DNA from: Mytilus californianus
Taxonomy: Eukaryota
Length of the DNA stretch: 64,000 bases
Reading direction: 5' to 3'
NCBI RefSeq assembly: GCF_021869535.1
Contig: NW_026262723.1
Coordinates: 83,514,001 to 83,578,000, forward strand
Part shown: piece after piece, positions 7,913 to 29,344 of the stretch
Position numbering within the stretch: the stretch's first letter is position 1
Layout: each line of letters starts with the position of its first letter
Notes under the pieces: model-generated
What the model saw: only the letters and a program-made list of their open reading frames with translations
Databases searched by the model: none
Told to the model about the DNA's origin: nothing
Program-made: the position numbers and the translations under genes

Positions 7913-9208
7913 TTAAAAAGGCATGTGAGCTTTTTCAGGAACTTTTCTGTTAATATTCTTGTCTGCTTGTTCCTTTGACTGTTTTTCTGTACGCTCATAA
8001 GGACGTTTAAGAGTATCATGACAAAGAGTAACTCCAAATCCTGGACGATCTGGTAAATCTATAAATCCATCCTTTGGAAGTGGTTCATCTACGAAAAGAT
8101 TGCCAAAATATGGTGTAATTTTGTCTGCTTTTGGGCTAAGATTTATGAATTCGGCTACAGGACAATTCCGAAACGCATACTGCAGATGGTAGGAATACAC
8201 GCTTGATCCATGGGGAATTATGATTGTATCATATGGAGAAGCCATGGCACACACTCGACGCGCCTCGGTAATACCTCCGAGCCAAGTTATATCTGGCTGC
8301 AGAATATCAACACACCCTGCGGTAATTAGTTGCTGAAATCCGTATCTACTGTATTCATGCTCTGCTGTGGTCAACATTACGCTACTTCCGCGTAAGGCGC
8401 TACGAACCTCGTTATATCCAGTGTAATTATCTGGTGGTAGAAACTCTTCCATCCATTTCAGCCCGTATTTTTCAAGTTCTTTAGCTAATTTAATTGCATA
8501 TGGCACAGTAAGAGCCATGTAACAGTCTAACATAAGCGGAAAGTTTGGACCAACCTTCTCTCTCCAATTCTTAAAGAACTCCACATTTTTACGGAAACCT
8601 TCATCGCCTGCTGCTGGCCCGTATGGACATGGTACTTTCGCACCGACGAAACCAAAGTCTTTAGCTATATCTGGTCGTGCTGTTGTACAGTAGACTGGAA
8701 GTCTATCTTTTGTTTTCCCGCCAAGTAAAGCATAAACTGGTTCCTTTCGGATTTTTCCCAATAAATCCCAGATAGCAATATCTACGGCGCTTATTGCCTG
8801 AACAGACAAACCTTTTCTTCCATAATTCCAGGTAGCACGAAACATTTGATCCCAAATAAGCTCAACATCTCGAGGATCTTGACCTTCGACAAAACGACTT
8901 AAATGTTTTTCAACTATATAACACCCAGGTTCTCCGCCAATAGTGATCCCGACACCTGTCGTTCCATCCGTGGCTTCCACCTCGACTACAAGGGATCCAA
9001 GCGCATTAATACCCCATGATTTTCTGGTCGCTGAATACTGTTCGTAACCCGACATTGGATTAGCGACAGGGGTCGGGAACCCGTTAATCCAGTGATCGTC
9101 TTGCACATCATGACAGTCGGCTCCCTGGTCTCCTAGCGACTGCTGCTCAGTAACAAAGGCTCGAACAGCTTTAATTCTGGGGAAATCTCTGCACTTATTG
9201 TTCGACAT
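7913..9208 (-). CDS. rhmD: L-rhamnonate dehydratase-like protein, copy 1 (enolase/mandelate racemase superfamily), 431 aa, intronless CDS
   Basis: Uninterrupted ORF colinear with RhmD/fungal LRA3-LGD1 as recalled: GADCHD, RKSWGINALG, YGRKGL, metal ligands LDCY/WMEEF/AEHEY, QPD-IPHGSS Asp-His dyad, AEF, PGFGV. The symbol is a family label, not proven orthology. Confidence 0.92.
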   Translation of the reverse strand: MSNNKCRDFPRIKAVRAFVTEQQSLGDQGADCHDVQDDHWINGFPTPVANPMSGYEQYSATRKSWGINALGSLVVEVEATDGTTGVGITIGGEPGCYIVEKHLSRFVEGQDPRDVELIWDQMFRATWNYGRKGLSVQAISAVDIAIWDLLGKIRKEPVYALLGGKTKDRLPVYCTTARPDIAKDFGFVGAKVPCPYGPAAGDEGFRKNVEFFKNWREKVGPNFPLMLDCYMALTVPYAIKLAKELEKYGLKWMEEFLPPDNYTGYNEVRSALRGSSVMLTTAEHEYSRYGFQQLITAGCVDILQPDITWLGGITEARRVCAMASPYDTIIIPHGSSVYSYHLQYAFRNCPVAEFINLSPKADKITPYFGNLFVDEPLPKDGFIDLPDRPGFGVTLCHDTLKRPYERTEKQSKEQADKNINRKVPEKAHMPF

Positions 9209-9336
9209 GATGAACCTTTTTTGATGAATTGCAATCTTCCGATGGTTAACAGGTGTAGTTATCAGTACGTACGTGGCTATGTAAATTCATCCTATGCTTA
9301 TTTGTCAACAACACCTTACCTATCAAATACTAGCTT

Positions 9337-9346
9337 TATTTATATA
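9337..9346 (-). promoter_or_regulatory. Candidate TATA box of dehydratase copy 1
   Basis: Minus strand reads TATATAAATA about 130 nt upstream of the ATG. Confidence 0.45.
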
Positions 9347-12164
9347 AAGGTATCTTATAGTTGATAAACACCGTCCGTGGGAAAGATAGAGATAGATGGG
9401 GCAATTGATAATGGAGATTAAATAAAGAGCTCATTGAAGGTCGCATCAGTCGGCCCGATAAATTACGGGGCAACAGTTAATTAAAGTCCACAATATAAAC
9501 AATCATATGGAAAGCAGTTGATAATTTATCCTTCATTCTGTTATTTTTGTTATGTTATGTTTTTATCGTTTTAACAATTATTGATAAATGTTATTGTTAA
9601 TTCACAGCGTCTGGTATTTATGGAAGTCATTTATTCGCTTATATTTTTTATAGTTTGAAATAATACAAAATTGTGTCTTTATTTATTCTTTATTTTCATC
9701 TCTGTTTTACCGTTTTTGTATTGCAGAAGGGTTATCTGTTCATGCCATTGAAGTACACTCGGAAGTACAGCTGTTTATAGCAAAGTGTAGGACGTTGGGA
9801 TTTTTATATCACAAATCATCAAGTACTTTTTAGTACTTTGAGTGTGCTTCAGTAATTGAATGCATTCTTGATCTTTCTTGAAAGGTATTATTTGGTGTTG
9901 GTCCAATTGAACTGGTGTTTTTGTTCGTGAGGCATTACGTTTATCGTACCAAATCTAACAGGACATGGCTTAGAAGATATACATCACACACAGCCAATCG
10001 GACACCCTCCTTATCATTGGTTTTACCGCCAGATGGAATAAGTCCAGGTGATCATATAGTGCTACCCAAGTCAACTAATTGGGGTAACATAATCCCCCGC
10101 CCCCTGAAAAAAAGAAACATTACATACAATAATTGAACAAAAACATTAAGATAATAAACTTTATCAATATTTGTAATACGGCAATAATAATGTAAACTGT
10201 GTGTGAGATGCCACTTCTTATTAGATATATATTCCTGCAGTTGGAATCATAATGCGAAAAAAAAACTCGAGTACAGCCAAAACGACTAATGTGACACAGC
10301 TGCTTATGTGAAGCGGCGAAAATGTTTTATTATAAATGAAATAGTTGACATATGGCACATTTAACTTGTTTAAATGTGAGGTAGGAAACAACTGTTCAAT
10401 GAAAGAAATGTTATTGCCTGGTCGTTTATTTAAGGCTGAGGTTGCAATTTCAGGCCATTAAAATTTACCAGTGATATATTAATTTTATCCTTAGAAAGTC
10501 AGTATTTCCTGTCTTTGAATTATTTCTCAATGCATGTAATTGCATATAATTTTGTAGGTGTAGCTTATTCAGAAGGTACGATTCAGAACATCAATAAATA
10601 AAGCGGTTGAGTCATATAAGCTTATATTAAACTCCAAATCGACGGTCAATTATTTGCGCCTTTAATTGAAATCTTTTTCCTTCCGTTCAAGTCGTTTGAT
10701 AGCTGAGCGTGCAGTTTTGTTTGTACATTGCATGGTAGCTATCGTGAATCTATAAACAGATAATATGATAGTTCAAATATGTTGATAAGTTTTCTTACGA
10801 TAACCAAATTCACCAGATAGTTTAATTTATATTTAACCTATAGCTGTACAATGTAACCTATGGGAATGCAACAAGAGTATAAATCTCAATAACCGAAAAT
10901 TATACCATAGCTATCTATGGTATAATTTTCACAATTATACCATGGTTTTGTTGTATTTGGTATTCGAAAAGAAAAAAAGGAAGATAGCAAGGCCTATTCG
11001 AGGCCGCCTGATTTTTTTTAAATAGGAACAACAGAGTCAGTGTAGGGGCCACTAAGCTAAACCGCCCGCTTTGCACCAGCCGATATAAATGAATGCCTAG
11101 GGTGGGAATCGAACCCACATACACCAACTCCGTTGTCCTATATTTTTAAATGAACGAAAATTCGATTCAAGAACAAAGTTTTAAAAAAAAAGTATATATA
11201 AATATATTATTATATTATACTTGAAAATATAATTCGATTTTCGGTTATTGAGATGTATACTTGGATTGTAGTCCCTTAGGATCAACTGTATAGCTACATG
11301 TAAAGGTTGAAATTTGCCGTGGCGGCTTTTTAAGGGGGAGGAAGGGGGAAGGCATGCCCCTTTCAAGAAGCTTTATATATGGTAAATGCATAGATATTTC
11401 GTTTTATTACTCCAAATATTGGATGGCTAGACCCCCCCCCCCCCCCTCCTTTTCAAAATCCTGGATCCGTATCCGATTTTATATACATCTTAATTTAACG
11501 ATTTGCTTAAGTAATAACTATAATGTTGGGCCGTTAAGAATAGAAAGCGTCTGGTTACTCTAAATAAAGGTGAACTTTTGTTTAAATTATCTATAGTCTA
11601 CATGTGATTTTTAATGATCTTTAATCGTGATCATTTTGAAATCCTTTTTAATTAGATTCAATTAAATGAACAACTTGGGCTTCTGGTACAAATTAAAACA
11701 TGGAATGATTCATCCAAACTCTCAGAAAGATTCTTGTGAATTAAATTTCCACAGAATTATAAATTAATACCAAAAACTTAAAAACATTTCAAATATTTTG
11801 ATAAAATAAAATAAAAAACTAACCCTTTGCAGTTCAACTTTAAATCTGGGTTCCAGAAATCTTTCAAACTATATCTTGCGTCCATATACATACAGAACAT
11901 ATAATTCCTTCAACAGTTTTTAGTCTGTAACGTTACCCGTCACCAATGTAGATGTGCATCCATCGCTGTCGAAAAATCTTGTCCAACTGATTTCCCCGCT
12001 GTTTCAGAAGCCCGTGCGTATTTTATAAAGTAGGCGGAGCTTAATGTGTAAGGTCCTAAAAGGGTAATTTGACCGATTCTTATCAAAATTATTTTTGAAG
12101 TTAATAAACAAAAATATATGAAATATACATTTTTAAACAACAACATATGCAATAGGTTAAAACA

Positions 12165-12345
12165 GATATTTCATATATTTTGGTTAGTTTTGTGGTGTTT
12201 CGTAAATTATACCATAGTTTTTTGTTGAAACCCCTCGGCAACCTCACTCGACTTCGTCTCGTGAGGTTATTGCCGGGGGTTTCAACAAAAGCTATGGTAT
12301 AATTTACGAAACACCACAAAACTATTCAAAAGATATGAAATATCT
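12165..12345. mobile_element. Foldback/palindromic MITE
   Basis: ~63-bp arms 12185-12247 and 12261-12324 are near-perfect inverted repeats; the flanks (gatatttcata/tatgaaatatc) are also inverted. Confidence 0.8.
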
Positions 12346-12944
12346 ATAACATATCAAGGTCAGACTAACAACGATAGTGTTGATACAATTATAATATAAG
12401 AAATAAATCAGAGATTTGTTGAGGTAAACGCAAATTAGACAGATCATGCACGGAGACCAAAACATCAACATTTAAAAGCGCATTAAATCGGCGGATGTTG
12501 GGTCTTCATTTGACACTTACTTTAATCCAAAGTTAAAATTGATCGATGTTCTGTATAATTTTATTTTTGCTGCATTTTTTCTGAATAAAATCGATTCCGT
12601 ACTTCGAGTTTGTGACATGCATATATGTTTTACTTAATACATTTATTCTTTTCTGAATTCTATCTATAAATTTCTTTCTAGCATTACTCAAAACAATGTT
12701 TCTTTGCACCTGTACATGACTTTATTGTATGAAATCTTCTTGCAAGCAAATCAGCCGTTTTTTTGTGTGCAATAAGACATATTTCCTATATCGGCGGTTG
12801 GAATACTTTCAAGTTATGCATGCTAAGTGTTACTGCAAGCATTGTTTGATATGGTGACTTTCGTTTTTAGGTGTGTTTATGTCATATGCATACAATACTA
12901 AAATTATTATTTCATTTTTGTTGTTTTGTTTTTGTCGTGTAAGT

Positions 12945-13395
12945 GATCATAATTTAGAAATTGAATTAGGACGTTATAAAAAAATTCAAAGAGAACACAG
13001 ACTGTGCAAAGTTTGTAAAGTTTTAGATGATGAGGAACACTTTTTCCTTCATTGCCAAATTAACAGTAATGTAAGACATTCCCTTATAAATGCAATTAAA
13101 ACCCATTATCCTAATTTTAACCAGCTTGACTCAAACTCTAAACTTAAAACTATTCTAGATCCCAATAAAAATATTTTGTCTAGTGTTGTAGACTATATAA
13201 AGCAATCTATGGAATTGCGAAAATAAGGTCCACATTGGTCAATTATTATATATATATATATATATTATTAATATCAACTTGACTTGTTTAAAACATTTAT
13301 CATGTATTATGTTTCTTGTCACTTGTGTATACAATGTACTATGTTTGCTTTTTAGCCCGCCAGGGTTTCATGTTTTGCAATAAAGTTTATATGTA
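12945..13395 (+). mobile_element. 3' fragment of a non-LTR retrotransposon (C-terminal CCHC-like region)
   Basis: RVSDHNLEIELGRY..RLCKVC..DEEHFFLHC resembles a LINE ORF2 C-terminus; followed by an AT-rich 3' UTR with aataaa. Confidence 0.75.
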
Positions 13396-13404
13396 TACAG
13401 TTTG

Positions 13405-13868
13405 ATCCTTTTTGGTGATATAACTCTTCAACTGTTTCGATTCTTATACAACTTTGGTTCTCAAATATTCGGCTTTGAGTGTTCCTGATGAAGGTAAATC
13501 CAGAAAATCGCTCCGGACCCATGAAATTCATAACGTGTTGTTTTCATTTTTGACAGCACTGGGTCGATACCTCTGCTGGTGGACTATCATTCCCCGAGAG
13601 TATCAACAGCTCAGTAGTCAGTATTTCGGTACTGACATGATTTATTACAAAGTTCTCTAAAATTGTCCGTTTATAAATTTGGAAATTTTAAAGAAACTAA
13701 GGTTCCAACTCCTTCAGGCAGAGTTGAACTTAGATGGATTTGGCAATTTTTAGGTCCTTTTTGGTCATACAACTCTTCAACTGTTTCGGTTCTTACAATA
13801 TTTGGCTAACAGATATTCGGCTTTGAGTGTTCCTGATGAAGATAAATCCTTAAAAGTGCTTCGGACGC
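13405..13868 (+). mobile_element. Retrozyme of a second class (348-bp period) with two degenerate hammerheads
   Basis: CTGATGA at 13485 and 13833 (period 348). The middle is homologous to the 354-bp class (cactgggtcgat...gctggtgga...gtcag..ttcgg..tgacatga). Confidence 0.8.
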
Positions 13869-14210
13869 ATGGAAATATCAAGCAATTAGAAACGAAAGAC
13901 CTACCATTTCTGGCTGACAACAAATGGAAATATCAAGCAAGTAGAAACGAAAGACCTATCATTTCTGGCTGAGGACAAATGGAAATATCAAGCAAGAAGA
14001 AACGAAAGACCTACCATTTTTGGCTGAGGACAAAGGGAAATATCAAGCAAGCACAAACGAAAGACCTACCATTTCTGGCTGAGGACAAATGGAAATATCA
14101 AGCAAGCACAAACGAAAGAACTACCATTTCTGGCTGAGGACAAATGGAAATATCAAGCAAGTACAAACGAAAGACCTATCATTTCTTGCTGAGGACAACT
14201 GAAATATCAA
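13869..14210. repeat. 55-bp minisatellite, ~6 copies
   Basis: Unit atggaaatatcaagcaagtagaaacgaaagacctaccatttctggctgaggacaa at 13869, 13924, 13979, 14034, 14089, 14144. Confidence 0.95.
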
Positions 14211-14242
14211 ATTAAATTGTTTAAGAATGTTTTTTGAAAACA

Positions 14243-14248
14243 TTTATT
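14243..14248 (-). terminator. Candidate polyadenylation signal of dehydratase copy 2
   Basis: AATAAA on the minus strand about 33 nt after the stop. Confidence 0.5.
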
Positions 14249-14280
14249 TCAAACGACCTCATTGTTACAAGGAAGAACAC

Positions 14281-15597
14281 TTAAAATGGCATATGCGCTT
14301 TTTCCACAACAGCCTTCTTAATATTTCGGTCTGCTTGTTCTTGGCTTTGTTCCTCTGTTCTCTGATAGGGACGTCTGAGTGTATCGCGACAAAGAGTTAC
14401 ACCAAATCCAGGACGATCTGGTAAATCAATGAATCCGTTAGCTGGCAGAGGTTCGTCTAGGAAAAGACCACTAAAGAATGGGGATATTGTATCAGCCTTT
14501 GGACTTAAATTGATAAATTCAGCAATTGGACAGTTTTGAAAAGCATATTGTAGATGGTATGAATACACACTTGATATATGAGGAATTACCATAATATCAT
14601 AAGGAGATGCCATTGCGCATATCCTACGTGCTTCGGTAATACCTCCGAGCCAAGTGATGTCTGGCTGAAGAATATCTACACATCCTCTTGAAATCAACTG
14701 TTCAAATCCATATCTGCTGTACTCATGCTCCCCTGTAGTAAGAAGGACAGTGCTGCCGCGCATTGAATCACGAACATCGCTGTATCCGGTGTAATTATCT
14801 GGCGGAAGAAATTCTTCGATCCACTTCAGTCCATATGTTTCTAGTGCTTTTGCGAGTTTGATAGAATACGGTACAGTCAATGCCATGTAACAGTCTAACA
14901 TTAAAGGAAAATCAGGTCCGACCTTTTCCCGCCAGTTCTTGAAAAATTCTACATTCTTTCGAAAACCTTCATCACCAGCTGATGGCCCATAAGGACACGA
15001 AACCTTTGCCCCTACAAATCCAAGCTCTTTTGCAATGTCTGGTCGCGTAGTCGTGCAATAAACAGGGAGTCTCTGTTTAGTTTTACCGCCAAGCAAGGCA
15101 TATACTGGCTCTTGTCTAATTTTTCCAATCAAATCCCAAAGCGCAAGATCAACTGCGCTTATTGCTTGAACCGATAGCCCTTTCCTACCGTAATTCCACG
15201 TCGCCCGAAACATCTGGTCCCACATAAGTTCAACATCTCTGGGGTCCTGACCTTCAATGAATCGACTAAGATGATGTTCCACTATGTAGCATCCAGGTTC
15301 TCCACCGATTGAGATCCCCACACCAGTCGTACCGTCAGTGGCTTCAACTTCGACAACTAAGGAGCCAAGTGCGTTAATGCCCCATGATTTCCATGTGGCT
15401 GCATACTGATCATATCCCGACATAGGATTTGCAATTGGTGTTGGATATCCATTAATCCAGTGTTTATCATCAACGTCATAACAGTCTGCTCCTTGGTCCT
15501 TTCCTTTGTCATCACTGGCATTGTTGTCAGAAATGTAAGCTCGGACTGCTTTTATACGAGGAAATTTCCGACATGTTGTCTTAATTATAGTAGTCAT
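14281..15597 (-). CDS. rhmD: L-rhamnonate dehydratase-like protein, copy 2, 438 aa, intronless CDS
   Basis: Paralog of copy 1 over its whole length, with the same EKAHMPF C-terminus. True start is probably Met44 of the listed ORF (MTTIIKTT): homology starts there, and a pyrimidine tract plus CAG acceptor sits 21 nt upstream at 15619-15621. Confidence 0.9.
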   Translation of the reverse strand: MTTIIKTTCRKFPRIKAVRAYISDNNASDDKGKDQGADCYDVDDKHWINGYPTPIANPMSGYDQYAATWKSWGINALGSLVVEVEATDGTTGVGISIGGEPGCYIVEHHLSRFIEGQDPRDVELMWDQMFRATWNYGRKGLSVQAISAVDLALWDLIGKIRQEPVYALLGGKTKQRLPVYCTTTRPDIAKELGFVGAKVSCPYGPSAGDEGFRKNVEFFKNWREKVGPDFPLMLDCYMALTVPYSIKLAKALETYGLKWIEEFLPPDNYTGYSDVRDSMRGSTVLLTTGEHEYSRYGFEQLISRGCVDILQPDITWLGGITEARRICAMASPYDIMVIPHISSVYSYHLQYAFQNCPIAEFINLSPKADTISPFFSGLFLDEPLPANGFIDLPDRPGFGVTLCRDTLRRPYQRTEEQSQEQADRNIKKAVVEKAHMPF

Positions 15598-18500
15598 TTT
15601 ACAACCAAGCTTGAAAACCTGATAAATAAGTATAATGATAAAAAACATCTGATAGTGAAAGATAACGTATGCCATCTCACGGACAGCAAAGTTGATGATA
15701 AACAGATGAATAATTTTCTTAACCAAAAGGTCAGATGCGATATTGTCAATTTCCTTTTCTTATCAACTTTTTTTAATAAAATCAATATGAAAACAGCTTG
15801 GTAGCCAAAATATACTTTGATGGATTGTAAAGTTGGATGCCTTCCTTCGGAAATGCATGTCATTCATGTAACGAACAATTCCTCCGATAAAAACGCTTCC
15901 CCCTCTTTTTATGCCGAATTCATAGAACAGAAACAAACTTCAAGTACTTTCAAAGCGGTTTGTGTTTGTACCGGCCGACAAAACAGCCAACATGTGGTGC
16001 TGGTATGCCGTAAATACTACATGGACGTTCTTAAGAATGAGATTTTAAATTCTTCTACATTCAAGTCCGTGCGCTCCACAGAGAGTCATATAGTAAACAA
16101 GCATATCAAAACCACATCACAGCTTAAGGCCTCTTCTGAACAATTGAAGGTCCCTACTAAGGATTGGTTACCTAAACTACACACAAAAAAGTCAAATATC
16201 GTATCATCTCGGCCTCTAGTAAGTGATCTACAACTGATCTTTCAGTGCCTTTTTTTTTAAACTAGTTCCATAACTAATATCAAAGAATCTATCATTAACT
16301 TTTGTAATAAAATATATGAAAATAGTGGAATTAACTAATTTTGGAGTGTAAAAAATTCCTTGGATGTTTTAGATAAATTACGTGCTTTTGATAGTCCTTT
16401 TGATTCTGTTGACAGTTTTGACTTTTCAACTCTTTACACTACACTTCCACACAATCTTATCAAACAAAAGTTTTCCTATTTAATTAACTGGTCGTTTGGT
16501 AAATCTGAATGCAAATATATTTGCTGCAACTCATTTAAAGCCTTCTTCTCTAATGAGAAAGGTAAATATGCTAGATATACTTACTGGAGGTGTGATGAGA
16601 TGATTGAAGCTGTTAATTTTCTCCTTTATAACAATTATGTACGTTTCGGCAATAAAGTTTATCGACAGGTAGTATGTATTCCTATGGGCACCAATTGCGC
16701 CCCTTTAATATCAGACTTGTTCTTGTACTGTTATGAATCACAGTTTATGACCAAACTCAGTACAGACCCGTCTAAATTGCATTTAATTGATAAATTCAAC
16801 AACACTTACCGTTATCTTGATGATATTTTTTCGTTAAATAATCAAGAATTTTTTAAATATCCTGCCGAAATTACTCAAAGGAACTTACTCTAAATAATTC
16901 AAATGTAAATGGTAATAACTGTCCTGTCCTAGATGTAGATATTTCAGTTTCACACGGGAAACTCTACACTTAAATTTACGACAGAAGGGACGATTTTTCG
17001 TTCCCTATTGTTAATTTTCCTTTTCTGGACGGTGATGTTCCTTTGGCACCATCTTACGGTGTTTATATATCACAACTCGTTCGCTACGCCCGTGTCTACT
17101 GTGACGTTTTGGATTTCAATGAACGTAATCTATGTATTACTGGTAAATTATAAGTCAGGGATTTCGTTACCACAAATTACTTAAAACCTTTACTAAATTC
17201 TTCCATAGATATAAAGATTTGGTTTTGAAGATTGGTTGTACCTGTAGAAAACTCATTTCAAACGGGATAGCAAATCCTAATTTTTACGAAGATGTTGTTT
17301 ACCGAGCCCGGAAATTTAGAAACGATCCGGGTAAACATATCGATCCTTTAAATAAACTTATTCTAAAAGGGTACCAATTCAACACTGTAATTAGATCTTT
17401 GAATATTGTTTTTATTGGTATTAAAATTGATTTTGTTATCAGTAAATTAAAATCAAACTAAGTATTATTTTTATATGTATATACATATGCATATTCATGG
17501 CTCTACAAGCTGTCGATACCTGTATCTTGGCATTGCACAAGGTCGTGTATTTCTCTGACTGTTTATGACGTCTTTACACTAAATCTATTGAATGTTGGAT
17601 GTGTACTGATTGATATTTTAGTCTTAGATGCATGATTTTTTATTGGTTGTTATTGGCTTTGAACAACTAGCTGTCAGTAACTACGAGTACTCTCAGATCT
17701 GTACTTAGTGTCTTTTTGTTGTGGGGATGTATAAATACCCTGGCACGTCCACTCTGTGTTTTTGTTACTTGTTTTTGCTTTGTATCTATCTGATGAGTTA
17801 AACCCTTTTCAACTGATTTTTATAGTTTGTTCATATGTTGTACTGTTACACCACTGTCCAAGATTAGGGGGAGGGTTGGGCACCCGCTAACATGTTTAAC
17901 CCCGCCACATTCTGTATGTGCCTGTCCCAAGTCAGGATCCTGTAATTCAGTGGTTGTCGTTTGTTGCTGTATATCATATTTGTTTTTCGTTTATTATGTT
18001 GTACATAAATCAGGCCATTAGTTTTCTCGTTTGAATACTTTTACATTTGTCATTTCGGGGCCTTCTATGGCTGACTATGCGGTATTGGCTTTGCTCATTG
18101 TTGAAGGCCGTACGGTGACCTATAGTTGTTAATTTCTGTGTCATTTGGTATCTTGTGGAGAGTTGTCTCATTAAGGAAATGTTTTATCATGATTTACTCC
18201 TTTTTAGACTGTAATATTCAGTTTTCTGTCTATGAAGAAATAACATAAAAAATGTGGTGCACACTGAATAACTCGCGTAGCGGGTTATTCAAAAGTGTGC
18301 ACCACATTTTTTATGTTATTTCGAATAGACAAAAAAAGTATTACAGTCATTCCTTATAATTTAATTCTAAAAATTCGTAAGGGTTCCGCGGAACCCAGTG
18401 TCTCGCCTACTTTTCTGTTAATCGCAGGCTCAACAAAAATGAGGAAGTAAATCAATAAAAATATTCCCCTTGATACTATCTTCTGATTGTAAGAAGCTTC

Positions 18501-19054
18501 TGTCCAAGTTTGGTAAAAATCCAGGAGAGTTTATGAATCTAATAAATGTTTAAAAACTTTAACTGCAGACTGAATGTAATGTTAATTGGAAGAAAACAAA
18601 TTTCCTTCTAGATACTAGCATTTGATCATAAACAAGCTTCTGTCCAAGTTTGGTTCAAATCCAAAATAGTATAAGAAAGTTATTAAAATTTTAAAAACTT
18701 TAACCACAGAGTGAATATGTTGTTTCCTGGCAGAAAATCTAAGTCCATTTAAAAGTAAAATACGGAAAAAATGGATTTATTTTTTTACAAAATTTCCTTC
18801 TAGATACTAGCTTTTGATCATAAGCAAGCTTCTGTCCAAGTTTGGTACAAATCCAAAATAGTATAAGAAAGTTATTAAAATTTTAAAAACTTTAACCACA
18901 GAGTAAATATGTTGTTTCCTGGCAGAAAATCTAAGTCCATTAAAAGTAAAATAAGGAAAAAATGGATTTATTTTTTTACAAAATTTACTCCTAGATACTA
19001 TCTTATGATCATAAACAAGCTTCTGTCCAAGTTTGGTACAAACCCAGGATAGTT

Positions 19055-21412
19055 CTTCTTCTTCTTCTTCCATATACTGCCCACATTCAACATGATGAAT
19101 ATTCTGGCAAGTTGCGCATGATTAAAAACAGGTTAAAAACAGGATAAAAACAAATTGTTCTGTTGATTTAGTTTGTGGTTTTGGTGACTTGAGACTTGAA
19201 TATCTCAAGAGACTTTGCTGTGGCGGTATCTGGTGGCAGTTTGTTCCAATCCTTGACGGTGTTTATGAAGAAGGACCATTTCCTACAGTCTTTGGTGGCT
19301 GGCTGTAATAGGTAAGTATGTTGTCCTGTCCGGTTTGAGCTTCTTGTTGGTTTTTGTAGATATTTATTCTTGTCTATGGCTACAAGGTCGTTTGTTATTT
19401 TGTAACACATGATGAGTCGTGCTTCTTTTCGTCTTGTTTGTAAGCTTTTCCATCCTAATTCATTTATCATGTTGCTGACACTTGATCTATTTCTATGTCT
19501 GCTGGTTACATATCGTGCAGCTCTTCTTTGTACCTTTTCAATTTTATCTATGTGGTTTTGCTGGTACGGGTCCCATACTGTCGTGGCGTATTCCATTTGC
19601 GGTCTTACTAATATTTTATAGGCATGCTCTTTGATGGATTTTGAGCTAATGTGGAGGTTTCGATGTAGGAAACCAAGGCTTCGGCTGGCTTTTCCTGTGA
19701 TGTTGTTTATATGTTCTCCCCAATCTAGATCATTTGCGATGGTGCAGCCTAGGTATTTAGTTGATGTTTCATGCACCAGAGTATGGCCGTGGAGTTTATA
19801 GTCCCACTTGGTTGGCTTTTTCTTTTTTGTAACAGTGAGGACACTACATTTTTCAGGATGGAACTCCATTTTCCAGAGTTCTTCCCATTTTGCCAGTTTG
19901 TCCAGGTCTTCTTGGAGTTTATGGCAGTCGCTGTCTGATGAAATTGTCAAATAGACCACAGTATCGTCCGCAAACAGTCTCACTGTGGAGTGTAAGCCTT
20001 CTGGTAGGTCGTTGATGTAGAACAGAAAAAGACTGGGTCCTAATACTGATCCTTGCGGTACTCCGGATTCTACTTTTACTTTGTCAGATGTTTCGCCTTC
20101 AACAACTACTACCTGGGTTCTATTGGTGAGAAATTCCTTTATCCATTTGTTTGTTTTACTTCGGATGCCATAATGGTGTAATTTATGGAGGAGTAAGCTG
20201 TGGGACACCTTATCAAAAGCTTTTGAAAAGTCAAGTATTAGCAGATCTGATTGTTTTCCGTTTTCCAGGTTTTTTGTGATGTCATCGATACATTCAAGGA
20301 GTTGTGTTTCGCATGATCTTTTACTTCTGAAGCCGTGTTGTAATGGGTATAGTATGTTATTTACCTCTGCATGTTTCATGATGTTACTGGTGACTATGTG
20401 TTCTATTATTTTGCAGCAAATACATGTTAGGGATATTGGCCTATAGTTAGCTGCTATGTATTTCTGGCCTTTCTTATATGCCGGAGTGACATTTGCAGTT
20501 CGCCAGTCATCGGGTATCTTTCCTTCCTCCATTGAAAAATTGTATATGATGGTTAAGATTGGAGCAATTTCACTGGCTAGTTCTTTCAGAATCATTGGCT
20601 TGATGTTGTCTGGTCCAGCAGCCTTGTGTGGTTTTAGATTTTTCAGCTGTTTTTCCACTCCATTAATTGTGATGATTATTTGTTCGCTGTCTGGATAATT
20701 TTCTGGTAGATCTGACATGAGTTTTTTCTTTTCAAAATCTCGTTTACTGATTGGACATGCAGCAGTGAAGACTGATTGAAATTGATCATTTAGAATATTT
20801 GCTTTATTTATTGGGTCAGTTTCTAATTTCCCATTTCTTCTAAGTGGTGCTACTCCATTTTTATCACTTTTCTTGTGTTTGATATAGGTCCAGAATCTTT
20901 TTGTTGGTGAACGGATGTCCTCGTTATCTTCTGGAGTTATTATGTCTTCTATATACTTCCAATAGGCTTGTCTTGATTTTCTTTGGATGGTTTGTTTCAG
21001 TTGTTTAAATCTTTTATCATCAGTAGCATGGTTTGATTTCTTTTTCTTTTTATAAGCTCGGTCTCTTCGTCTCATAAGTTTTTTGATTTCCTGGGTTATC
21101 CATGGGTTTTTGTCCTTAGTCTTGCATACTTTGGAAGGTATATGCTGGTTAGTACTGCTTTCTAGGTCTTCTTTGAACATGTTCCAGAGTATATTGATGT
21201 TTGTCTTCTTGTTCAGGCTTTCTTTTTGAATTTTGATATAAAGCAAATTCATATCCTCTTTTATGCTGTCCCATTTAGCTCTTCTATACAGTTGGATTTT
21301 TCTTGGCTTTTGTTTGTTTGTCATTGGATTGGTGTTCATTTCTGCATACACAATATCATGGTCTGAAATTCCTGGAATGACATCAAGTCTCATCATTTTA
21401 CTAGGACAGTTG
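19055..21412 (-). mobile_element. 5'-truncated LINE (CR1/L2-like group) with (GAA)n tail
   Basis: Carries the RT ORF; 3' tail gaagaagaa at 19055-19070; candidate TSD TAGTT at 19050-19054 and 21438-21442, with a short target-like filler at the 5' junction. Confidence 0.92.
19168..21396 (-). CDS. LINE ORF2 remnant: end of the APE endonuclease plus a complete reverse transcriptase, 742 aa open
   Basis: PGISDHD, NYRPISL, QHGFR, DFSKAFDKV, GVPQGSVLGP, LFADD motifs; no stops. Confidence 0.93.
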   Translation of the reverse strand: MMRLDVIPGISDHDIVYAEMNTNPMTNKQKPRKIQLYRRAKWDSIKEDMNLLYIKIQKESLNKKTNINILWNMFKEDLESSTNQHIPSKVCKTKDKNPWITQEIKKLMRRRDRAYKKKKKSNHATDDKRFKQLKQTIQRKSRQAYWKYIEDIITPEDNEDIRSPTKRFWTYIKHKKSDKNGVAPLRRNGKLETDPINKANILNDQFQSVFTAACPISKRDFEKKKLMSDLPENYPDSEQIIITINGVEKQLKNLKPHKAAGPDNIKPMILKELASEIAPILTIIYNFSMEEGKIPDDWRTANVTPAYKKGQKYIAANYRPISLTCICCKIIEHIVTSNIMKHAEVNNILYPLQHGFRSKRSCETQLLECIDDITKNLENGKQSDLLILDFSKAFDKVSHSLLLHKLHHYGIRSKTNKWIKEFLTNRTQVVVVEGETSDKVKVESGVPQGSVLGPSLFLFYINDLPEGLHSTVRLFADDTVVYLTISSDSDCHKLQEDLDKLAKWEELWKMEFHPEKCSVLTVTKKKKPTKWDYKLHGHTLVHETSTKYLGCTIANDLDWGEHINNITGKASRSLGFLHRNLHISSKSIKEHAYKILVRPQMEYATTVWDPYQQNHIDKIEKVQRRAARYVTSRHRNRSSVSNMINELGWKSLQTRRKEARLIMCYKITNDLVAIDKNKYLQKPTRSSNRTGQHTYLLQPATKDCRKWSFFINTVKDWNKLPPDTATAKSLEIFKSQVTKTTN

Positions 21413-23201: not shown

Positions 23202-26200
23202 ATGACCACCACTATTCCAAAAACTATGAAAGCTCTTGTGAAAACGAAAGAAGGTAGTTCTTTTGAATACAAGGATGTACCTGTTCCTGAGCCTAAAGAT
23301 GACGAAGTCTTACTTAAAGTAGATGCAATTTCAGTTTGTGGATCCGACATATCTTTGTACATGTGGAATGAAGTTGCAAGAGTTATAGCCACGGTGCCGT
23401 TTATACCAGGACACGAATGTGCAGGAACAGTTGTTAAATGTGGACCAAAAGCCGACATCGCTGTAGGAACAAAAGTTGGAGTTGAGAACCACTACTTTTG
23501 TGGAAGTTGTTTCCAATGCAAGAATGATTGTCGTGAAATTTGTAAAAACATGGGACAGTTTGGACATGGCAAGAAAACGGAGCATGGTGCATGTTCAGAG
23601 TATACCATAGTCTCAGCGAAGTATTTGTATCAGCTTACGAGAAATTTAAGTAAGTGGAAAAAACACCCACTTATATCCTATATATTGACCCTTAGATTAA
23701 ACGTTCTAAATATAGTCCATTTATATAGTAACAGTTGATAAAGTTTTTACATTTAAATCTCGCTGGCCTCTTGGTTGGCAAAATAGTATATTTTCGTGGC
23801 TAAAACTATTTAAAATACCTATAACAGTTACTATTGAAAATAAATCAGTTTAATTTAATAAAATAAAATCAAATAATTTTATTGGTGTAAATTCCAATAC
23901 AGGAATGATACCAGCTGACATTTACAAAATACAAAAACAAAAATAAACAACAAAAAAAGACATATACAAAGACATTTTTTCTCAATGATAAGAGACGCAT
24001 ATTTTATAATATAACTACATTGCGTGGAGGTATTATTCATAATATGTGCTATCAAGCTATTACAATAAGCGTTAATACTATAACAGTTCTCAACAACATT
24101 ATGTTTGCTTTATTAAAATAAATGTTCTTATCATGCATATCGCTTATTCCAGCTACACATACATTACATATGTCAGTAACATTACTTTTACTTTAATATG
24201 ACTTTGAGGCACTTTACACACAAAGCTAGATTTCGTTTTATATCGACACACAATTTCAGAAAACAAAAGAACAATTCCGTAGTTCGTGAAATTGAAGTAC
24301 ATGAATACCAATACAAACATATTTTTAGATATCAACTGAGTTACTGCCGTCTGATAGTATTCAAATAATAAAAACCTTTTTTTTTTTTTCATAAAGTTGA
24401 CAATTTTTACATCCACTTCATTTGTACTTTGGTGGATATATAGTTTTCTCATTGGCAATCATACCACATCTCCTTATTTTTATATTATACACTAAGTCTA
24501 TAAAATATCTTGTCACTGAAGCACGCTGTGTTGAAGCATCGGGGTGGGGACCCTTAGTAATATCTGTTCATAACATAAATTCACGAATGCGTATATTTTA
24601 AGGACCATTCTGTTTTCCCAGATTAGCATTTCATATGCCTATGGTCTATCTTTATCGCTTTTCTTGTCAGTTTGGAATCATTAAAGACTTTACTTTTTGT
24701 TTAAGGTTTTTATGTGGGTTTGAGATGTATATTCTAGTATCCTGATCATGTGATGCAATTAATTATACATTGCTTACCGCCACTAGTAGACAATGGTTGT
24801 CTTTTGTATCAACTGTGAAAGGATAGATATAAGAAGATGTGGTATGAGTGCCAATGAGACAACTCTCCATCCAAGTCACAATTGGTAAAAGTAAACCATT
24901 ATAGGTCAAAGTACGGCCTTCAACGCGGAGCATAGGCTCACACCGAACAGCAAGCTGTAAAGGGCCCTAAAAATGACTAATGTAAAACCATTCAAACAGG
25001 AAAACCAACAGTCTAATCTATATAAAAAACGAGAAACACTTATGAACCACATCAACAAACGACAACCACTGAACAACAGGTTCCTGTACAGAATGGCCCA
25101 CATCAACAAACGACAACCACTGAACATCAGGTTCCTGTACAGAATGGCCAACATCAACAAACGACAACCACTGAACAACAGGTTCCTGTACAGAATGGCA
25201 TTGGGATAATTTCTTCATTAATTAAAAGCTTTTATAAAACAAATAAATGTAGAGTAAATTATTAACCATATTTCAGACGCGGATCAAACAGCTATGCTAG
25301 AGCCGCTAGGTGTGGCACATAATGCCGTTGAGAGATTAGATGTTGCAGGTGAAGATGCTCTTATCATCGGGTGTGGACCAGTTGGATTGTTAGCTGGAAT
25401 GGTGGCTAAAGCTGAAGGAGCTAAAAGGTGGTTTACTTAATTTATTCTATTGAACGAAAGATTGAACACGGTGTTTAAGGTTTATAGGAATTTCAGATTG
25501 ATTTGCATTCCATTTGACATCAGTAAGAGATTGTTCACAACACCACCATACAACACACACAAACAACCCCTACCATAAAGAAAAACTCATATGCAAAACA
25601 AGGACAAGCAAATAAACAATTAACAAAACATAAGAACAGAAAGAATAGAAATAAAAACAAAACAAAAGAGGCAATTAAATTTTCCAATAAAAGTCTTGAA
25701 TAAAAACTTTCTGAATTATTTTATAACAATGAGAATGAAATTTTCAGTTTGAATTCTTGGATTTTTTTCAAAATAATATACTGCTCGCGAAAAAAAAAAG
25801 AAACTGCATTTCTCAATATATTTCAAACATTAACTTTATATATTTGCAATTACGATAACTGAACAAGTTTATGTTTTTGAATGTTGCAAAGGTTGGCATT
25901 CATTCATTCATTCATATCTTTAATTCCTCACAAATGAGATTAAATGAACATGCAATTAGTGAATATAAGTAAATGTCATAATAACAAACAAAATATCAGT
26001 ATGAAAGCAAAAGGAATAAGGTAGATACATAATAGATAAATGATTTGTTTATACAAGCAACATTAAAAGTATTTATGCAGTAACATATCATGTATTGGCA
26101 CGCCTAATATCACTGTCTCAGAGATCGACTATATTCTGCTACACACTGGACAACAGTTTGAGAAACTGAACAGATTCATCCATGTTGGAAAAATGTGTCA

Positions 26201-29200: not shown

Positions 29201-29344
29201 AACACTGAAGCTCTCGTTGCGGACGGCAAAGTCGATGTAAACGCACTGATCTCACACAGATTCCCAATGTCGAAGTTTGAAGATGCATTCCAAGTATTGT
29301 TTAGTGGAAAAGGTTGCAAAATTGTGTTGTATCCAAGTGAATAA
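23202..29344 (+). CDS. tdh: Zn-dependent L-threonine 3-dehydrogenase-like protein (MDR family), 5 coding exons, 355 aa
   Basis: Exons 23202-23649, 25277-25427, 28086-28182, 28388-28556 and 29142-29344. All GT-AG, phases consistent, 1068 nt in total. Motifs: VCGSD, GHE, CxxCxxCx7C, GCGPVG, GADID, GRRIFHTW, ISHRFP, GCKIVL. AATAAA at 29348 and 29394. Confidence 0.9.
24830..25090 (-). repeat. SINE-like copy of the PLE 3' tail
   Basis: gaagatgtggtatgagtgccaatgagacaactctcc...gtacggccttcaac is the reverse complement of the tail ending at 18172/21940; a similar copy lies at 30820-31260. Confidence 0.8.
25041..25200. repeat. 51-bp tandem repeat, 3 copies
   Basis: Unit atggcccacatcaacaaacgacaaccactgaacatcaggttcctgtacaga. 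Confidence 0.9.
25899..27200 (-). mobile_element. Degraded LINE 3' fragments in dehydrogenase intron 2
   Basis: ORF 26866-27189 has NHKLAIEIGRW..RTCKLC..GDEFHY (LINE ORF2 C-terminus); (GAAT)n tail at 25899-25914. Confidence 0.65.
27927..28005. repeat. ~22-bp minisatellite, ~4 copies
   Basis: ggaagttactccaataattcct repeats. Confidence 0.85.
28197..28262. repeat. 24-bp tandem repeat, 3 copies
   Basis: ctatatgatattgtgagtttttaa repeats in dehydrogenase intron 3. Confidence 0.85.

What the first reader, a model, noticed from the sequence alone, without database searches (positions are those of the whole stretch)
7913..15597. Tandem intronless microbial-type sugar-acid dehydratase genes embedded in an animal genome
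Seen: two full-length, intact, intronless ORFs of the RhmD/LRA3/LGD1 type. They are surrounded by host-type TEs, have candidate TATA/AATAAA signals, and sit next to intron-rich genes. Both share a ~28-aa C-terminal extension ending EKAHMPF. Established: this subgroup dehydrates L-rhamnonate or L-galactonate in bacteria and fungi, and is distinct from ENOSF1 (L-fuconate dehydratase), the usual animal member. Inference: horizontal acquisition, or retroposition of an old opisthokont gene, followed by duplication. This could let a filter feeder catabolise algal or bacterial rhamnose/galacturonate-derived acids, a pathway not well described in animals.
Basis: partly seen in the sequence, partly recalled or inferred. 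Interest (0 to 1): 0.75.

Follow-up and report, generated by a model that had tools for sequence, protein, structure and literature searches.

The report
Old animal sugar-acid dehydratase, duplicated in tandem
These are two intact, single-exon copies of an L-rhamnonate-dehydratase-type enzyme gene that molluscs, annelids, brachiopods, sponges and choanoflagellates all inherited from a common ancestor, so this is an ordinary old animal gene that lost its introns and was duplicated locally, not a recent bacterial import.

Summary
Two intact intron-free ORFs lie head-to-tail on the minus strand: A at 7913-9208 (431 aa) and B at 14281-15597 (438 aa). They are 82% identical. Both score above NCBIfam's curated cut-off for L-rhamnonate dehydratase, and the model of A superposes on solved RhmD structures.

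Recent horizontal transfer is not supported. Orthologs at 67-87% identity occur across molluscs, a brachiopod, annelids, a flatworm, sponges, choanoflagellates and protists. The window pair nests among bivalves in an ML tree. Neither eukaryote nor animal monophyly is rejected.

The sponge gene has 13 introns and the choanoflagellate gene 11, two of them at identical position and phase. The flatworm gene has 3 introns, one shared with the choanoflagellate. All seven mollusc, annelid and brachiopod genes checked have a single coding exon. Introns were therefore lost wholesale in an old lophotrochozoan ancestor.

The C-terminal tail ending in MPF is found throughout the eukaryotic clade and is absent from the closest bacteria.

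The duplication is old: synonymous sites are saturated and the flanks are unalignable. Copy A keeps every conserved site. Copy B has lost three near-invariant active-site-region residues and had no RNA reads in three data sets, yet its lineage shows omega 0.14.

The family is already annotated in many mollusc genomes. Interest is low to moderate.

The parts
7913..9208 (-). Copy A: single-exon CDS, 431 aa, L-rhamnonate-dehydratase-type enolase-superfamily enzyme. It keeps all conserved sites.
   Evidence: ORF. NF011968 515 bits against cut-off 393. No departures at 143 near-invariant columns. AF2 model pLDDT 92.7; best fold match A. vinelandii RhmD with target-normalised TM 0.96 and rmsd 1.5 A. 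Small run sets of the same organism, probably RNA, hold 0.90-0.92 of its words.
7916..7993 (-). Copy A C-terminal tail (residues 406-431): helix 408-419 followed by an extended end finishing in MPF.
   Evidence: Present in all eukaryotic orthologs aligned. Absent from 79 bacterial relatives. Predicted ordered, pLDDT 86-98.
14281..15597 (-). Copy B: single-exon CDS, 438 aa, paralog of A. Catalytic core kept, capping-domain residues changed.
   Evidence: ORF. NF011968 506 bits. 82% identity to A. 93% identity to P0004, with dN/dS 0.14. DNA contigs of run X15 confirm the sequence. No RNA reads in X21, X22 or X17.
15478..15480 (-). B codon 40, TAT (Tyr), where orthologs have His. This is the equivalent of Salmonella RhmD His33.
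15391..15393 (-). B codon 69, TGG (Trp), where orthologs have Arg. This is the equivalent of Salmonella RhmD Arg59. The B-type ortholog P0004 has Thr here.
14575..14577 (-). B codon 341, ATA (Ile), replacing the Gly that follows the catalytic His (PHG to PHI).
9209..14280 (.). 5.1-kb spacer between the two copies. It is unrelated to either flank of the other copy and partly made of high-copy host repeats.
   Evidence: No A/B similarity outside the CDS. DNA word depth reaches 1.9e5 at 13400-13599.
16360..21396 (.). Repeat and retroelement block upstream of B: a weak RT fragment at 16360-16893 and a LINE-type RT ORF at 19168-21396 (minus strand).
   Evidence: RVT_1 E 1e-38 and a weak 0.006 hit. 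Depth 1e5-1e6.
23202..29344 (+). Intron-bearing Zn-dependent MDR gene, best match L-threonine 3-dehydrogenase. It lies head-to-head with copy B, and this neighbour is conserved in other bivalves.
   Evidence: Exon ORFs. NCBIfam tdh is the best model on four exon pieces. The orthologous gene lies head-to-head about 2.1-2.2 kb from the dehydratase in Dreissena and Pinctada.

Best explanation
These are two tandem paralogs of an ancient nuclear gene for an Mg2+-dependent acid-sugar dehydratase of the L-rhamnonate dehydratase (RhmD/LRA3) family. The gene was already present, with spliceosomal introns, in the common ancestor of choanoflagellates and animals. It survives in sponges and spiralians. 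It lost all coding introns at once, most simply by retroposition or cDNA-mediated replacement, in an ancestor of molluscs, annelids and brachiopods. It was then duplicated in tandem in the bivalve lineage that includes this genome. Repeats have since filled the spacers, and a third copy just outside the window has decayed.

Copy A is the canonical enzyme. By homology, a His-Asp dyad (H333/D306) abstracts the C2 proton of L-rhamnonate or a similarly configured acid sugar (L-mannonate, L-lyxonate). The enediolate is stabilised by Mg2+ held by D228/E254/E283, and the 3-OH then leaves to give the 2-keto-3-deoxy acid.

Copy B keeps that core but has replaced the equivalents of RhmD His33, Arg59 and Gly330. 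It is therefore probably altered in substrate recognition, or impaired, and it is weakly expressed or not expressed in the samples examined.

Shown here: family membership, fold, conserved catalytic residues, phyletic spread, intron patterns, age of the duplication, and selection on the B lineage. Inferred: the actual substrate, the mechanism of intron loss, and the functional state of B.
For: Family. NF011968 scores 515 and 506 bits against a cut-off of 393. Solved RhmDs are the best sequence hits, at E 1e-136 to 1e-112, and the best fold hits, with target-normalised TM 0.92-0.96. The Mg ligands and the His-Asp dyad, mapped through the Salmonella chain, are intact in both copies.

Vertical history. 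Named orthologs occur in about 20 molluscs, Lingula, Owenia, Capitella, Macrostomum, 4 sponges and Salpingoeca. The window clade (100/99) sits inside a bivalve group, and Spiralia has support 97/80. AU tests do not reject eukaryote monophyly (p 0.54) or animal monophyly (p 0.42). The tail is present in all eukaryotic orthologs and in none of 79 bacterial relatives. CDS GC3 is 33%, like the host genome. Bacterial promoter and terminator motifs are not enriched.

Introns. Amphimedon has 13 and Salpingoeca 11, all GT-AG, and two are shared in position and phase. Macrostomum has 3, one shared with Salpingoeca. The CDS is a single exon in Haliotis, Dreissena, Lingula, Owenia, Pecten and Pinctada.

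Duplication. pS is 0.79 (saturated) and dN is 0.12, with no similarity in the flanks. B has its own ortholog, P0004, with dS 0.25, dN 0.036 and omega 0.14.

Not contamination. The locus lies on a contig that extends beyond 83.5 Mb. Gene B has single-copy DNA depth and is bounded by host repeats.
Against: No enzyme assay exists for any animal member, so the substrate is inferred from bacterial and fungal homologs at 45-50% identity. Within the ingroup, an Acidobacteriota/Chloroflexota/Gemmatimonadota clade sits in an unresolved polytomy with the eukaryotic lineages, so the deep origin and the direction of any ancient transfer are open. Fungal LRA3 sequences could not be added to the tree. No cnidarian, ecdysozoan or deuterostome ortholog appeared among the best 120 hits, so many losses must be assumed. 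Absence was not tested exhaustively. Expression of A rests on word shares in runs whose RNA status is partly guessed. Retroposition cannot be distinguished from other routes to complete intron loss.
Confidence: 0.85

Rival explanations
1. Recent horizontal transfer: a bacterial or fungal rhamnonate dehydratase gene entered this mollusc lineage and was then duplicated.
For: The ORFs are intronless. The family is best known from bacteria and fungi. The best bacterial relatives reach 58-66% identity.
Against: Animal, choanoflagellate and protist orthologs are closer (67-87%) than any bacterium. The window pair nests among bivalves. Sponge, flatworm and choanoflagellate orthologs carry introns at shared positions. 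The tail is shared with all eukaryotic orthologs and absent from bacteria. Codon composition matches the host.
Confidence: 0.02
2. Assembly contamination: the ORFs belong to a microbe or food organism and not to the animal genome.
For: None beyond the microbial flavour of the family name.
Against: The locus lies at 83.5 Mb on a chromosome-scale contig. It sits between high-copy host repeats and next to intron-bearing genes. DNA contigs run from gene B into its flanks at single-copy depth. Orthologs sit at comparable loci in chromosome-scale assemblies of other molluscs, and the same Tdh-like neighbour is found in two of them.
Confidence: 0.01
3. An ancient inter-domain transfer lies at the root. 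The whole holozoan and protist clade (or, in reverse, its bacterial sister clade) originated by a transfer between an Acidobacteriota/Chloroflexota-like bacterium and an early eukaryote, followed by vertical descent. This is compatible with the best explanation for everything inside animals.
For: The closest prokaryotic relatives form one well-supported clade (100/100) of Acidobacteriota, Gemmatimonadota and Chloroflexota, not a mitochondrial or archaeal-type lineage. The solved fungal enzyme is only 46% identical, less than those bacteria, so fungal LRA3 and the holozoan gene may not be one opisthokont lineage.
Against: The branching order at the base is unresolved. The direction cannot be told. 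Fungal sequences were not in the tree. The fungal structure aligns over 425-427 columns, against 402-414 for the bacterial ones, which may reflect a related C-terminal extension.
Confidence: 0.4
4. Copy B is a decaying, effectively non-functional duplicate whose reading frame happens still to be open.
For: B departs at four of the 143 near-invariant columns. Three of these departures are in the active-site region: His33-equivalent to Tyr, Arg59-equivalent to Trp, and Gly after the catalytic His to Ile. A departs at none. Two of the four, at the His33 and Gly330 equivalents, are absent from its 93%-identical ortholog P0004. There were no RNA reads over B in two RNA-seq samples and one probable transcriptome contig set. 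No TATA-like site lies upstream.
Against: The 438-codon frame is intact. dN/dS against P0004 is 0.14 at dS 0.25. Four departures lie within the range seen in other orthologs (median 1, maximum 7). Only about 6% of each raw run was read, and the tissues are unknown, so missing reads are weak evidence.
Confidence: 0.25

Closest known systems
Bacterial L-rhamnonate dehydratase RhmD/YfaW (E. coli, S. typhimurium, A. vinelandii; PDB 2i5q, 2p3z/3cxo, 2oz3)
   Same: Two-domain enolase-superfamily fold (target-normalised TM 0.94-0.96, rmsd 1.5-1.9 A). 45-50% identity. Same Mg ligands and His-Asp dyad. Above the NCBIfam equivalog cut-off.
   Different: The window genes are eukaryotic nuclear genes. They carry a 26-aa ordered C-terminal tail that the bacterial proteins lack. 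No operon partners (aldolase, transporter, regulator) lie nearby. The substrate is untested.
Fungal LRA3 L-rhamnonate dehydratase (Gibberella zeae, PDB 2p0i/3fxg; Scheffersomyces and Aspergillus LRA3/LraC of the non-phosphorylative rhamnose pathway)
   Same: A eukaryotic member of the same family. 46% identity. The structural alignment is longer (425-427 columns) and may include a C-terminal extension.
   Different: It is less similar than the Acidobacteriota/Chloroflexota clade (58-66%). According to the literature, fungal genes sit in LRA1-4 clusters; no such cluster is seen here.
'L-rhamnonate dehydratase-like' genes annotated in other animals (Haliotis, Dreissena, Pecten, Ruditapes, Mercenaria, Lingula, sponges)
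   Same: Direct orthologs at 67-79% identity with the same tail. The mollusc, brachiopod and annelid genes also have a single-exon CDS.
   Different: This genome has two intact tandem copies plus a decayed fragment, and one copy has altered capping-domain residues. The sponge and flatworm genes keep introns.
ENOSF1 / L-fuconate dehydratase (FucD), the enolase-superfamily member usually cited in animals
   Same: Same superfamily and the same general chemistry (acid-sugar dehydration).
   Different: A different family. No fuconate dehydratase model appeared among the NCBIfam hits, and all the best structural matches are RhmDs.

Membership tests
L-rhamnonate dehydratase (RhmD/LRA3; NCBIfam NF011968) | Whole-protein score above the curated equivalog cut-off (393 bits) | tested here: met
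   A scores 515.4 bits and B 506.2 bits, with full-length matches to positions 3-394 of 395.
L-rhamnonate dehydratase (RhmD/LRA3; NCBIfam NF011968) | Enolase-superfamily architecture: N-terminal capping domain plus a (beta/alpha)7beta barrel, with closest fold match to solved RhmDs | tested here: met
   Pfam MR_MLE_N plus MR_MLE_C. The AF2 model has pLDDT 92.7. The top 18 Foldseek hits are all RhmD entries, with target-normalised TM 0.92-0.96.
L-rhamnonate dehydratase (RhmD/LRA3; NCBIfam NF011968) | Mg2+ ligands Asp226, Glu252 and Glu280 (Salmonella numbering; residue roles recalled from Rakus et al. 2008, a paper not held here) | tested here: met
   Mapped through the 2p3z chain (chain index = native + 2). 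They correspond to D228, E254 and E283 in A and the equivalent residues in B. They are invariant in 56 aligned sequences.
L-rhamnonate dehydratase (RhmD/LRA3; NCBIfam NF011968) | His329-Asp302 catalytic dyad | tested here: met
   H333 and D306 in A, and H340 with its Asp in B, are invariant. In B the Gly after the His is replaced by Ile.
L-rhamnonate dehydratase (RhmD/LRA3; NCBIfam NF011968) | Conserved capping-domain residues equivalent to His33 and Arg59 (substrate contacts, from memory and not verified in a held paper) | tested here: inconclusive
   A keeps both (H33, R62). B has Tyr and Trp. Their role in substrate binding could not be confirmed from a source here.
L-rhamnonate dehydratase (RhmD/LRA3; NCBIfam NF011968) | Catalytic activity on L-rhamnonate | not testable with these tools
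   An enzyme assay is needed. No animal member is described in the 51 papers that mention the enzyme.
Non-phosphorylative L-rhamnose pathway (LRA1-LRA4 or RhmD/RhmA gene cluster) | Co-located dehydrogenase, lactonase and 2-keto-3-deoxy-L-rhamnonate aldolase genes | tested here: not met
   The window neighbours are repeats, a Tdh-like MDR gene and unrelated intron-rich genes. The sister bacterial loci do carry an ABC sugar transporter and an SDR. A genome-wide search for partner genes was not made.
Recently acquired horizontally transferred gene | Nests within a donor clade, is absent from related animals, and has foreign composition | tested here: not met
   The pair nests in bivalves. The gene is present across Spiralia, sponges and choanoflagellates. 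GC3 is 33%, like the host.

The most novel reading that the evidence does not exclude
The lophotrochozoan RhmD-like gene is an ancient retrogene that replaced its intron-rich parent more than 500 million years ago. In bivalves it has stayed locked head-to-head with a bacterial-type, Zn-dependent threonine-dehydrogenase-like gene as a small co-regulated catabolic module for deoxy-sugar acids from algal or bacterial food. In this lineage a tandem copy (B) has been retooled, through changes at the His33, Arg59 and Gly330 equivalents, for a different acid sugar. This would be a piece of carbohydrate catabolism that sponges and spiralians kept and most other animals lost.
Probability: 0.2. Interest if true: 0.5.

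Novelty: new member of a known kind. Interest (0 to 1): 0.3.

Why it matters
The result removes a tempting false positive for animal HGT, and it gives a worked example of why 'intronless and microbial-looking' is not enough to claim transfer. It also leaves some small positive points.

A RhmD-type dehydratase is an ancestral holozoan gene retained in sponges and spiralians, yet none of the 51 papers in the library that mention the enzyme discusses an animal member.

Its complete intron loss can be placed on the lophotrochozoan stem.

All eukaryotic members share an ordered C-terminal tail of unknown role.

The gene has a conserved divergent neighbour in bivalves.

One paralog here has changed residues that are conserved in at least 97% of orthologs. 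These points make a cheap enzymology project (substrate screens of A against B) well defined, and they bear on how filter feeders use rhamnose-rich algal and bacterial polysaccharides.

Tried and rejected
(1) The primary RhmD structure paper (Rakus et al. 2008) could not be read. Other held papers gave no residue-level detail. Residue roles are therefore from memory, and only their positions were mapped here.

(2) The ESM Atlas look-up returned only generic MR/MLE clusters and said nothing about animal distribution.

(3) Literature searches found no paper on animal rhamnonate dehydratases. One search was badly ranked and uninformative.

(4) Reads could be laid only once and on at most 6 kb, so only gene B was examined. 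No RNA reads fell on it. This is no support for expression, but it is not evidence of silence. Gene A expression rests on word shares.

(5) Bacterial-type promoter and terminator scans showed no excess over shuffles.

(6) The Tdh-like neighbour was considered as a pathway partner. Its best model is L-threonine 3-dehydrogenase and about 217 bits were summed over four exon pieces, below the cut-off. No functional link is shown.

(7) A genome-wide search for LRA1, LRA2 and LRA4-type partners was not run, because the candidate Pfam families (SDR, amidohydrolase-2, HpcH/HpaI, DHDPS, FAH) all have unrelated animal members and would not discriminate.

(8) The large representative-protein search and a homodimer prediction for the tail were not run, as they were not needed for the verdict.

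(9) Earlier-findings look-up by words found nothing.

(10) The 134 N in the window were left untouched.
Full report
**Observation**

Two uninterrupted ORFs lie on the minus strand. A is at 7913-9208 (431 aa). B is at 14281-15597 (438 aa from the first ATG; the mechanical ORF runs on to a TTG at 15726). They are 82% identical in protein. At the nucleotide level only the coding parts align, 7913-9130 with 14281-15498 at 75.5%, and there is no similarity in the flanks.

Both carry Pfam MR_MLE_N and MR_MLE_C. Both match NCBIfam NF011968, the L-rhamnonate dehydratase equivalog, over its full length at 515 and 506 bits against a curated cut-off of 393. The next models (galactonate, mannonate and talarate dehydratases) score below 150 bits.

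A search of the whole assembly (1.65 Gb; the window is at 83.51-83.58 Mb of contig C143) finds only these two copies. It also finds a decayed fragment about 8.6 kb beyond the window's low end, on the same strand. That fragment is 39-41% identical and has four stops.

**Family and mechanism**

The best solved relatives by sequence are the L-rhamnonate dehydratases of Azotobacter vinelandii (2oz3, E 4e-136), Gibberella zeae (3fxg/2p0i) and Salmonella/E. coli.

An AlphaFold2 model of A, built on a 56-sequence alignment, has mean pLDDT 92.7 and pTM 0.92. Its 18 best Foldseek matches in the PDB are all RhmD entries. The target-normalised TM-score is 0.96 with rmsd 1.5 A to 2oz3, and 0.94 to the Salmonella enzyme.

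I counted along the printed alignment to the Salmonella chain, where chain index equals native numbering plus 2. On that mapping, the residues I recall from Rakus et al. 2008 as Mg2+ ligands (Asp226, Glu252, Glu280) and as the catalytic dyad (His329-Asp302) correspond to D228, E254, E283, H333 and D306 of A. All are invariant in the 56-sequence alignment and present in B. The paper itself is not held, so the residue roles are from memory while the mapping is computed.

By homology the enzyme should abstract the C2 proton of L-rhamnonate, or of a similarly configured acid sugar, with the His of the dyad. The Mg2+ should stabilise the enediolate, and the 3-OH should then leave. The true substrate in animals is untested.

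**Is it foreign?**

It is not. The word-index protein search returned 5,480 relatives, and the best 120 are all of eukaryotic type. Named records come from:
- about twenty molluscs (Haliotis, Dreissena, Sinanodonta, Ruditapes, Mercenaria, Pinctada, Pecten, Argopecten, Mizuhopecten, Patella, Lottia, Gigantopelta, Pomacea, Lymnaea, Biomphalaria and others, plus the chiton Liolophura);
- the brachiopod Lingula;
- the annelids Owenia and Capitella;
- the flatworm Macrostomum;
- four sponges;
- the choanoflagellate Salpingoeca rosetta;
- a pelagophyte, and several EukProt protists.

These are 64-87% identical to A. Many are already labelled 'L-rhamnonate dehydratase-like' by NCBI.

The closest prokaryotic relatives, found by scanning one genome per GTDB species, are MAGs of Acidobacteriota (Pyrinomonadaceae, Blastocatellia, Vicinamibacteria), Gemmatimonadota and Chloroflexota at 58-66%. 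Pseudomonadota and Planctomycetota follow at about 50%.

**Trees**

A quick tree of 143 sequences and a careful tree of 67 (LG+C20+F+G4 PMSF) agree:
- The window copies form a clade (100/99) with four unnamed sequences from public read and metagenome assemblies.
- That clade lies in a group with Dreissena, Sinanodonta, Pinctada, Pecten and Capitella (87/93).
- Gastropods form their own clade (99/88).
- All spiralians group together (97/80).

Sponges, choanoflagellates, other protists and the Acidobacteriota/Chloroflexota clade (100/100) form an unresolved base. AU tests do not reject a single eukaryotic clade (p 0.54; the constrained tree is 1.07 log-likelihood units better). They also do not reject a single animal clade (p 0.42).

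Composition agrees with long residence. GC3 of both copies is 33%, like the surrounding 30-36% GC genome. Bacterial promoter and terminator motifs are at chance level.

**Introns**

I mapped annotated proteins back onto their genomic loci with an exact spliced matcher.
- The Amphimedon gene has 14 exons and the Salpingoeca gene 12. All introns are GT-AG.
- Two introns fall at the same position and phase in both (A residues 241 phase 0 and 288 phase 2). The expected number of chance coincidences is about 0.11.
- The Macrostomum gene has three introns, one at the same position and phase as a Salpingoeca intron (344 phase 0).
- The coding sequence is a single exon in Haliotis, Dreissena, Lingula, Owenia, Pecten and Pinctada, as in this window.

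The gene was therefore an ordinary intron-bearing nuclear gene before animals arose. The intron-free state is a shared, ancient condition of molluscs, annelids and brachiopods, best explained by one wholesale loss (retroposition or cDNA-mediated conversion).

**The C-terminal tail**

The roughly 26 residues after the conserved RPY motif, ending in M/L-P-F, are present in every eukaryotic ortholog inspected, including the choanoflagellate and the sponge. None of 79 bacterial relatives has it; they stop 0-15 residues after RPY.

The model predicts it as ordered: a helix at 408-419 and then an extended end, with pLDDT 86-98. The fungal structure aligns over 425-427 columns, against 402-414 for the bacterial ones, so fungi may have a comparable extension.

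The tail is a marker of the eukaryotic clade, not of this duplication. Its role is unknown.

**The duplication and the two copies**

Synonymous differences between A and B are saturated (pS 0.79) while dN is 0.12, so the duplication is old and both copies have been under constraint. B has its own ortholog, P0004 (93% identical). For that pair dS is 0.25, dN is 0.036 and omega is 0.14, and similarity extends about 120 nt upstream of the ATG. The duplication therefore predates that speciation, and the B lineage has been under purifying selection.

I defined 143 alignment columns in which at least 97% of 105 other eukaryotic sequences share one residue. Departures from them are:

| Sequence | Departures | Details |
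|---|---|---|
| A | 0 | none |
| B | 4 | H40Y, R69W, G341I, G376S |
| P0004 | 3 | includes R69T |
| other orthologs | median 1, maximum 7 | |

Three of B's changes fall exactly on the equivalents of Salmonella His33, Arg59 and Gly330, the residue after the catalytic His. This agrees with the separate first-stage note s1-279550. The His and Gly changes are not shared by P0004.

**Reads**

I laid reads on 12000-17999.
- A DNA run of the same organism covers gene B at single-copy depth (14-38) with four single-base differences. None is at the altered codons.
- The flanks reach depths of 1e4-1e6, which is typical of host repeats.
- Two raw RNA-seq runs, one from the same organism and one from a sister species (about 6% of each read), and one small contig set gave no reads over 14000-15399.

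That same small contig set, and three others like it, hold 0.90-0.92 of the sampled words of gene A. An on-record RNA run holds 0.43. A is therefore probably transcribed. B was not seen, but this is weak negative evidence.

My reading is that A is the working canonical enzyme. B is either retooled for another substrate or beginning to decay.

**Context**

Upstream of B there is a repeat block with a LINE reverse-transcriptase ORF (RVT_1, E 1e-38). Beyond it, head-to-head with B, lies an intron-bearing Zn-dependent MDR gene at 23202-29344. Its exon pieces best match L-threonine 3-dehydrogenase.

The orthologous MDR gene lies head-to-head about 2.1-2.2 kb from the dehydratase in Dreissena (68% identity) and Pinctada (77-80%). 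It is not within 10 kb in Pecten, nor within 3-4 kb in Haliotis, Lingula or Owenia. This is a conserved divergent gene pair in three bivalve lineages. Whether the pairing is functional is unknown.

In the sister bacterial clade the dehydratase sits beside an ABC sugar transporter and an SDR, or beside a GFO/IDH/MocA oxidoreductase and an amidohydrolase. That is the usual setting of an acid-sugar catabolic enzyme.

**Novelty and verdict**

Fifty-one papers in the held library mention rhamnonate dehydratase, and none discusses an animal member. The gene is nevertheless routinely annotated in mollusc genomes.

This is a new member, a lineage-specific tandem pair, of a known and widely annotated family. 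The HGT reading fails. The points worth keeping are the ancient complete intron loss, the tail shared across the eukaryotic clade, the conserved Tdh-like neighbour, and the altered paralog B. Interest is low to moderate.

Noticed in passing
window 23202-29344 (+), with L005:1-1889 and L096:1-7818: A bacterial-type Zn-dependent MDR gene (best model L-threonine 3-dehydrogenase) with introns lies head-to-head with dehydratase copy B. The same divergent pair, about 2.1-2.2 kb apart, exists in Dreissena and Pinctada. It is not within 10 kb in Pecten.
   Followed up: partly
G000:C143:83505368-83505700 (L003:1498-1830), about 8.6 kb below the window start, minus strand: A third, decayed dehydratase fragment covering A residues 126-235, 39-41% identical with four stops. 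The locus was therefore once at least a three-copy tandem array.
   Followed up: partly
L016, L027, L040 (Acidobacteriota) and L053, L066 (Chloroflexota): In the closest bacterial clade the dehydratase is flanked by an ABC permease fused to a periplasmic sugar-binding domain and by an SDR. In the Chloroflexota it is flanked by a GFO/IDH/MocA oxidoreductase and an amidohydrolase. These look like acid-sugar catabolic operons.
   Followed up: partly
window 19168-21396 (-), 16360-16893 (+), 13400-13800: A 742-aa LINE-type reverse-transcriptase ORF, a weak RT fragment, and short segments with DNA word depth of 1e5-1e6. These are very high-copy host repeats, some of them transcribed in the RNA runs.
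   Followed up: partly
L097 (Macrostomum lignano) 2001-4525: The flatworm ortholog keeps three introns, one at a position and phase shared with Salpingoeca. Its first donor reads GC in the annotated model. It is also the longest branch among the animal sequences.
   Followed up: partly
tree rows P0079, P0097, P0105 and P0109, P0114, P0118: Two well-supported clades of unnamed or EukProt sequences fall inside or beside the animal groups, one with the spiralians and one near the sponges. Their organisms were not identified.
   Followed up: no
window 15586 (T>C in DNA run X15 and one RNA read of X22): A variant that would change B codon 4 from Ile to Met. It is the only non-synonymous difference reported within gene B in the reads.
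   Followed up: no
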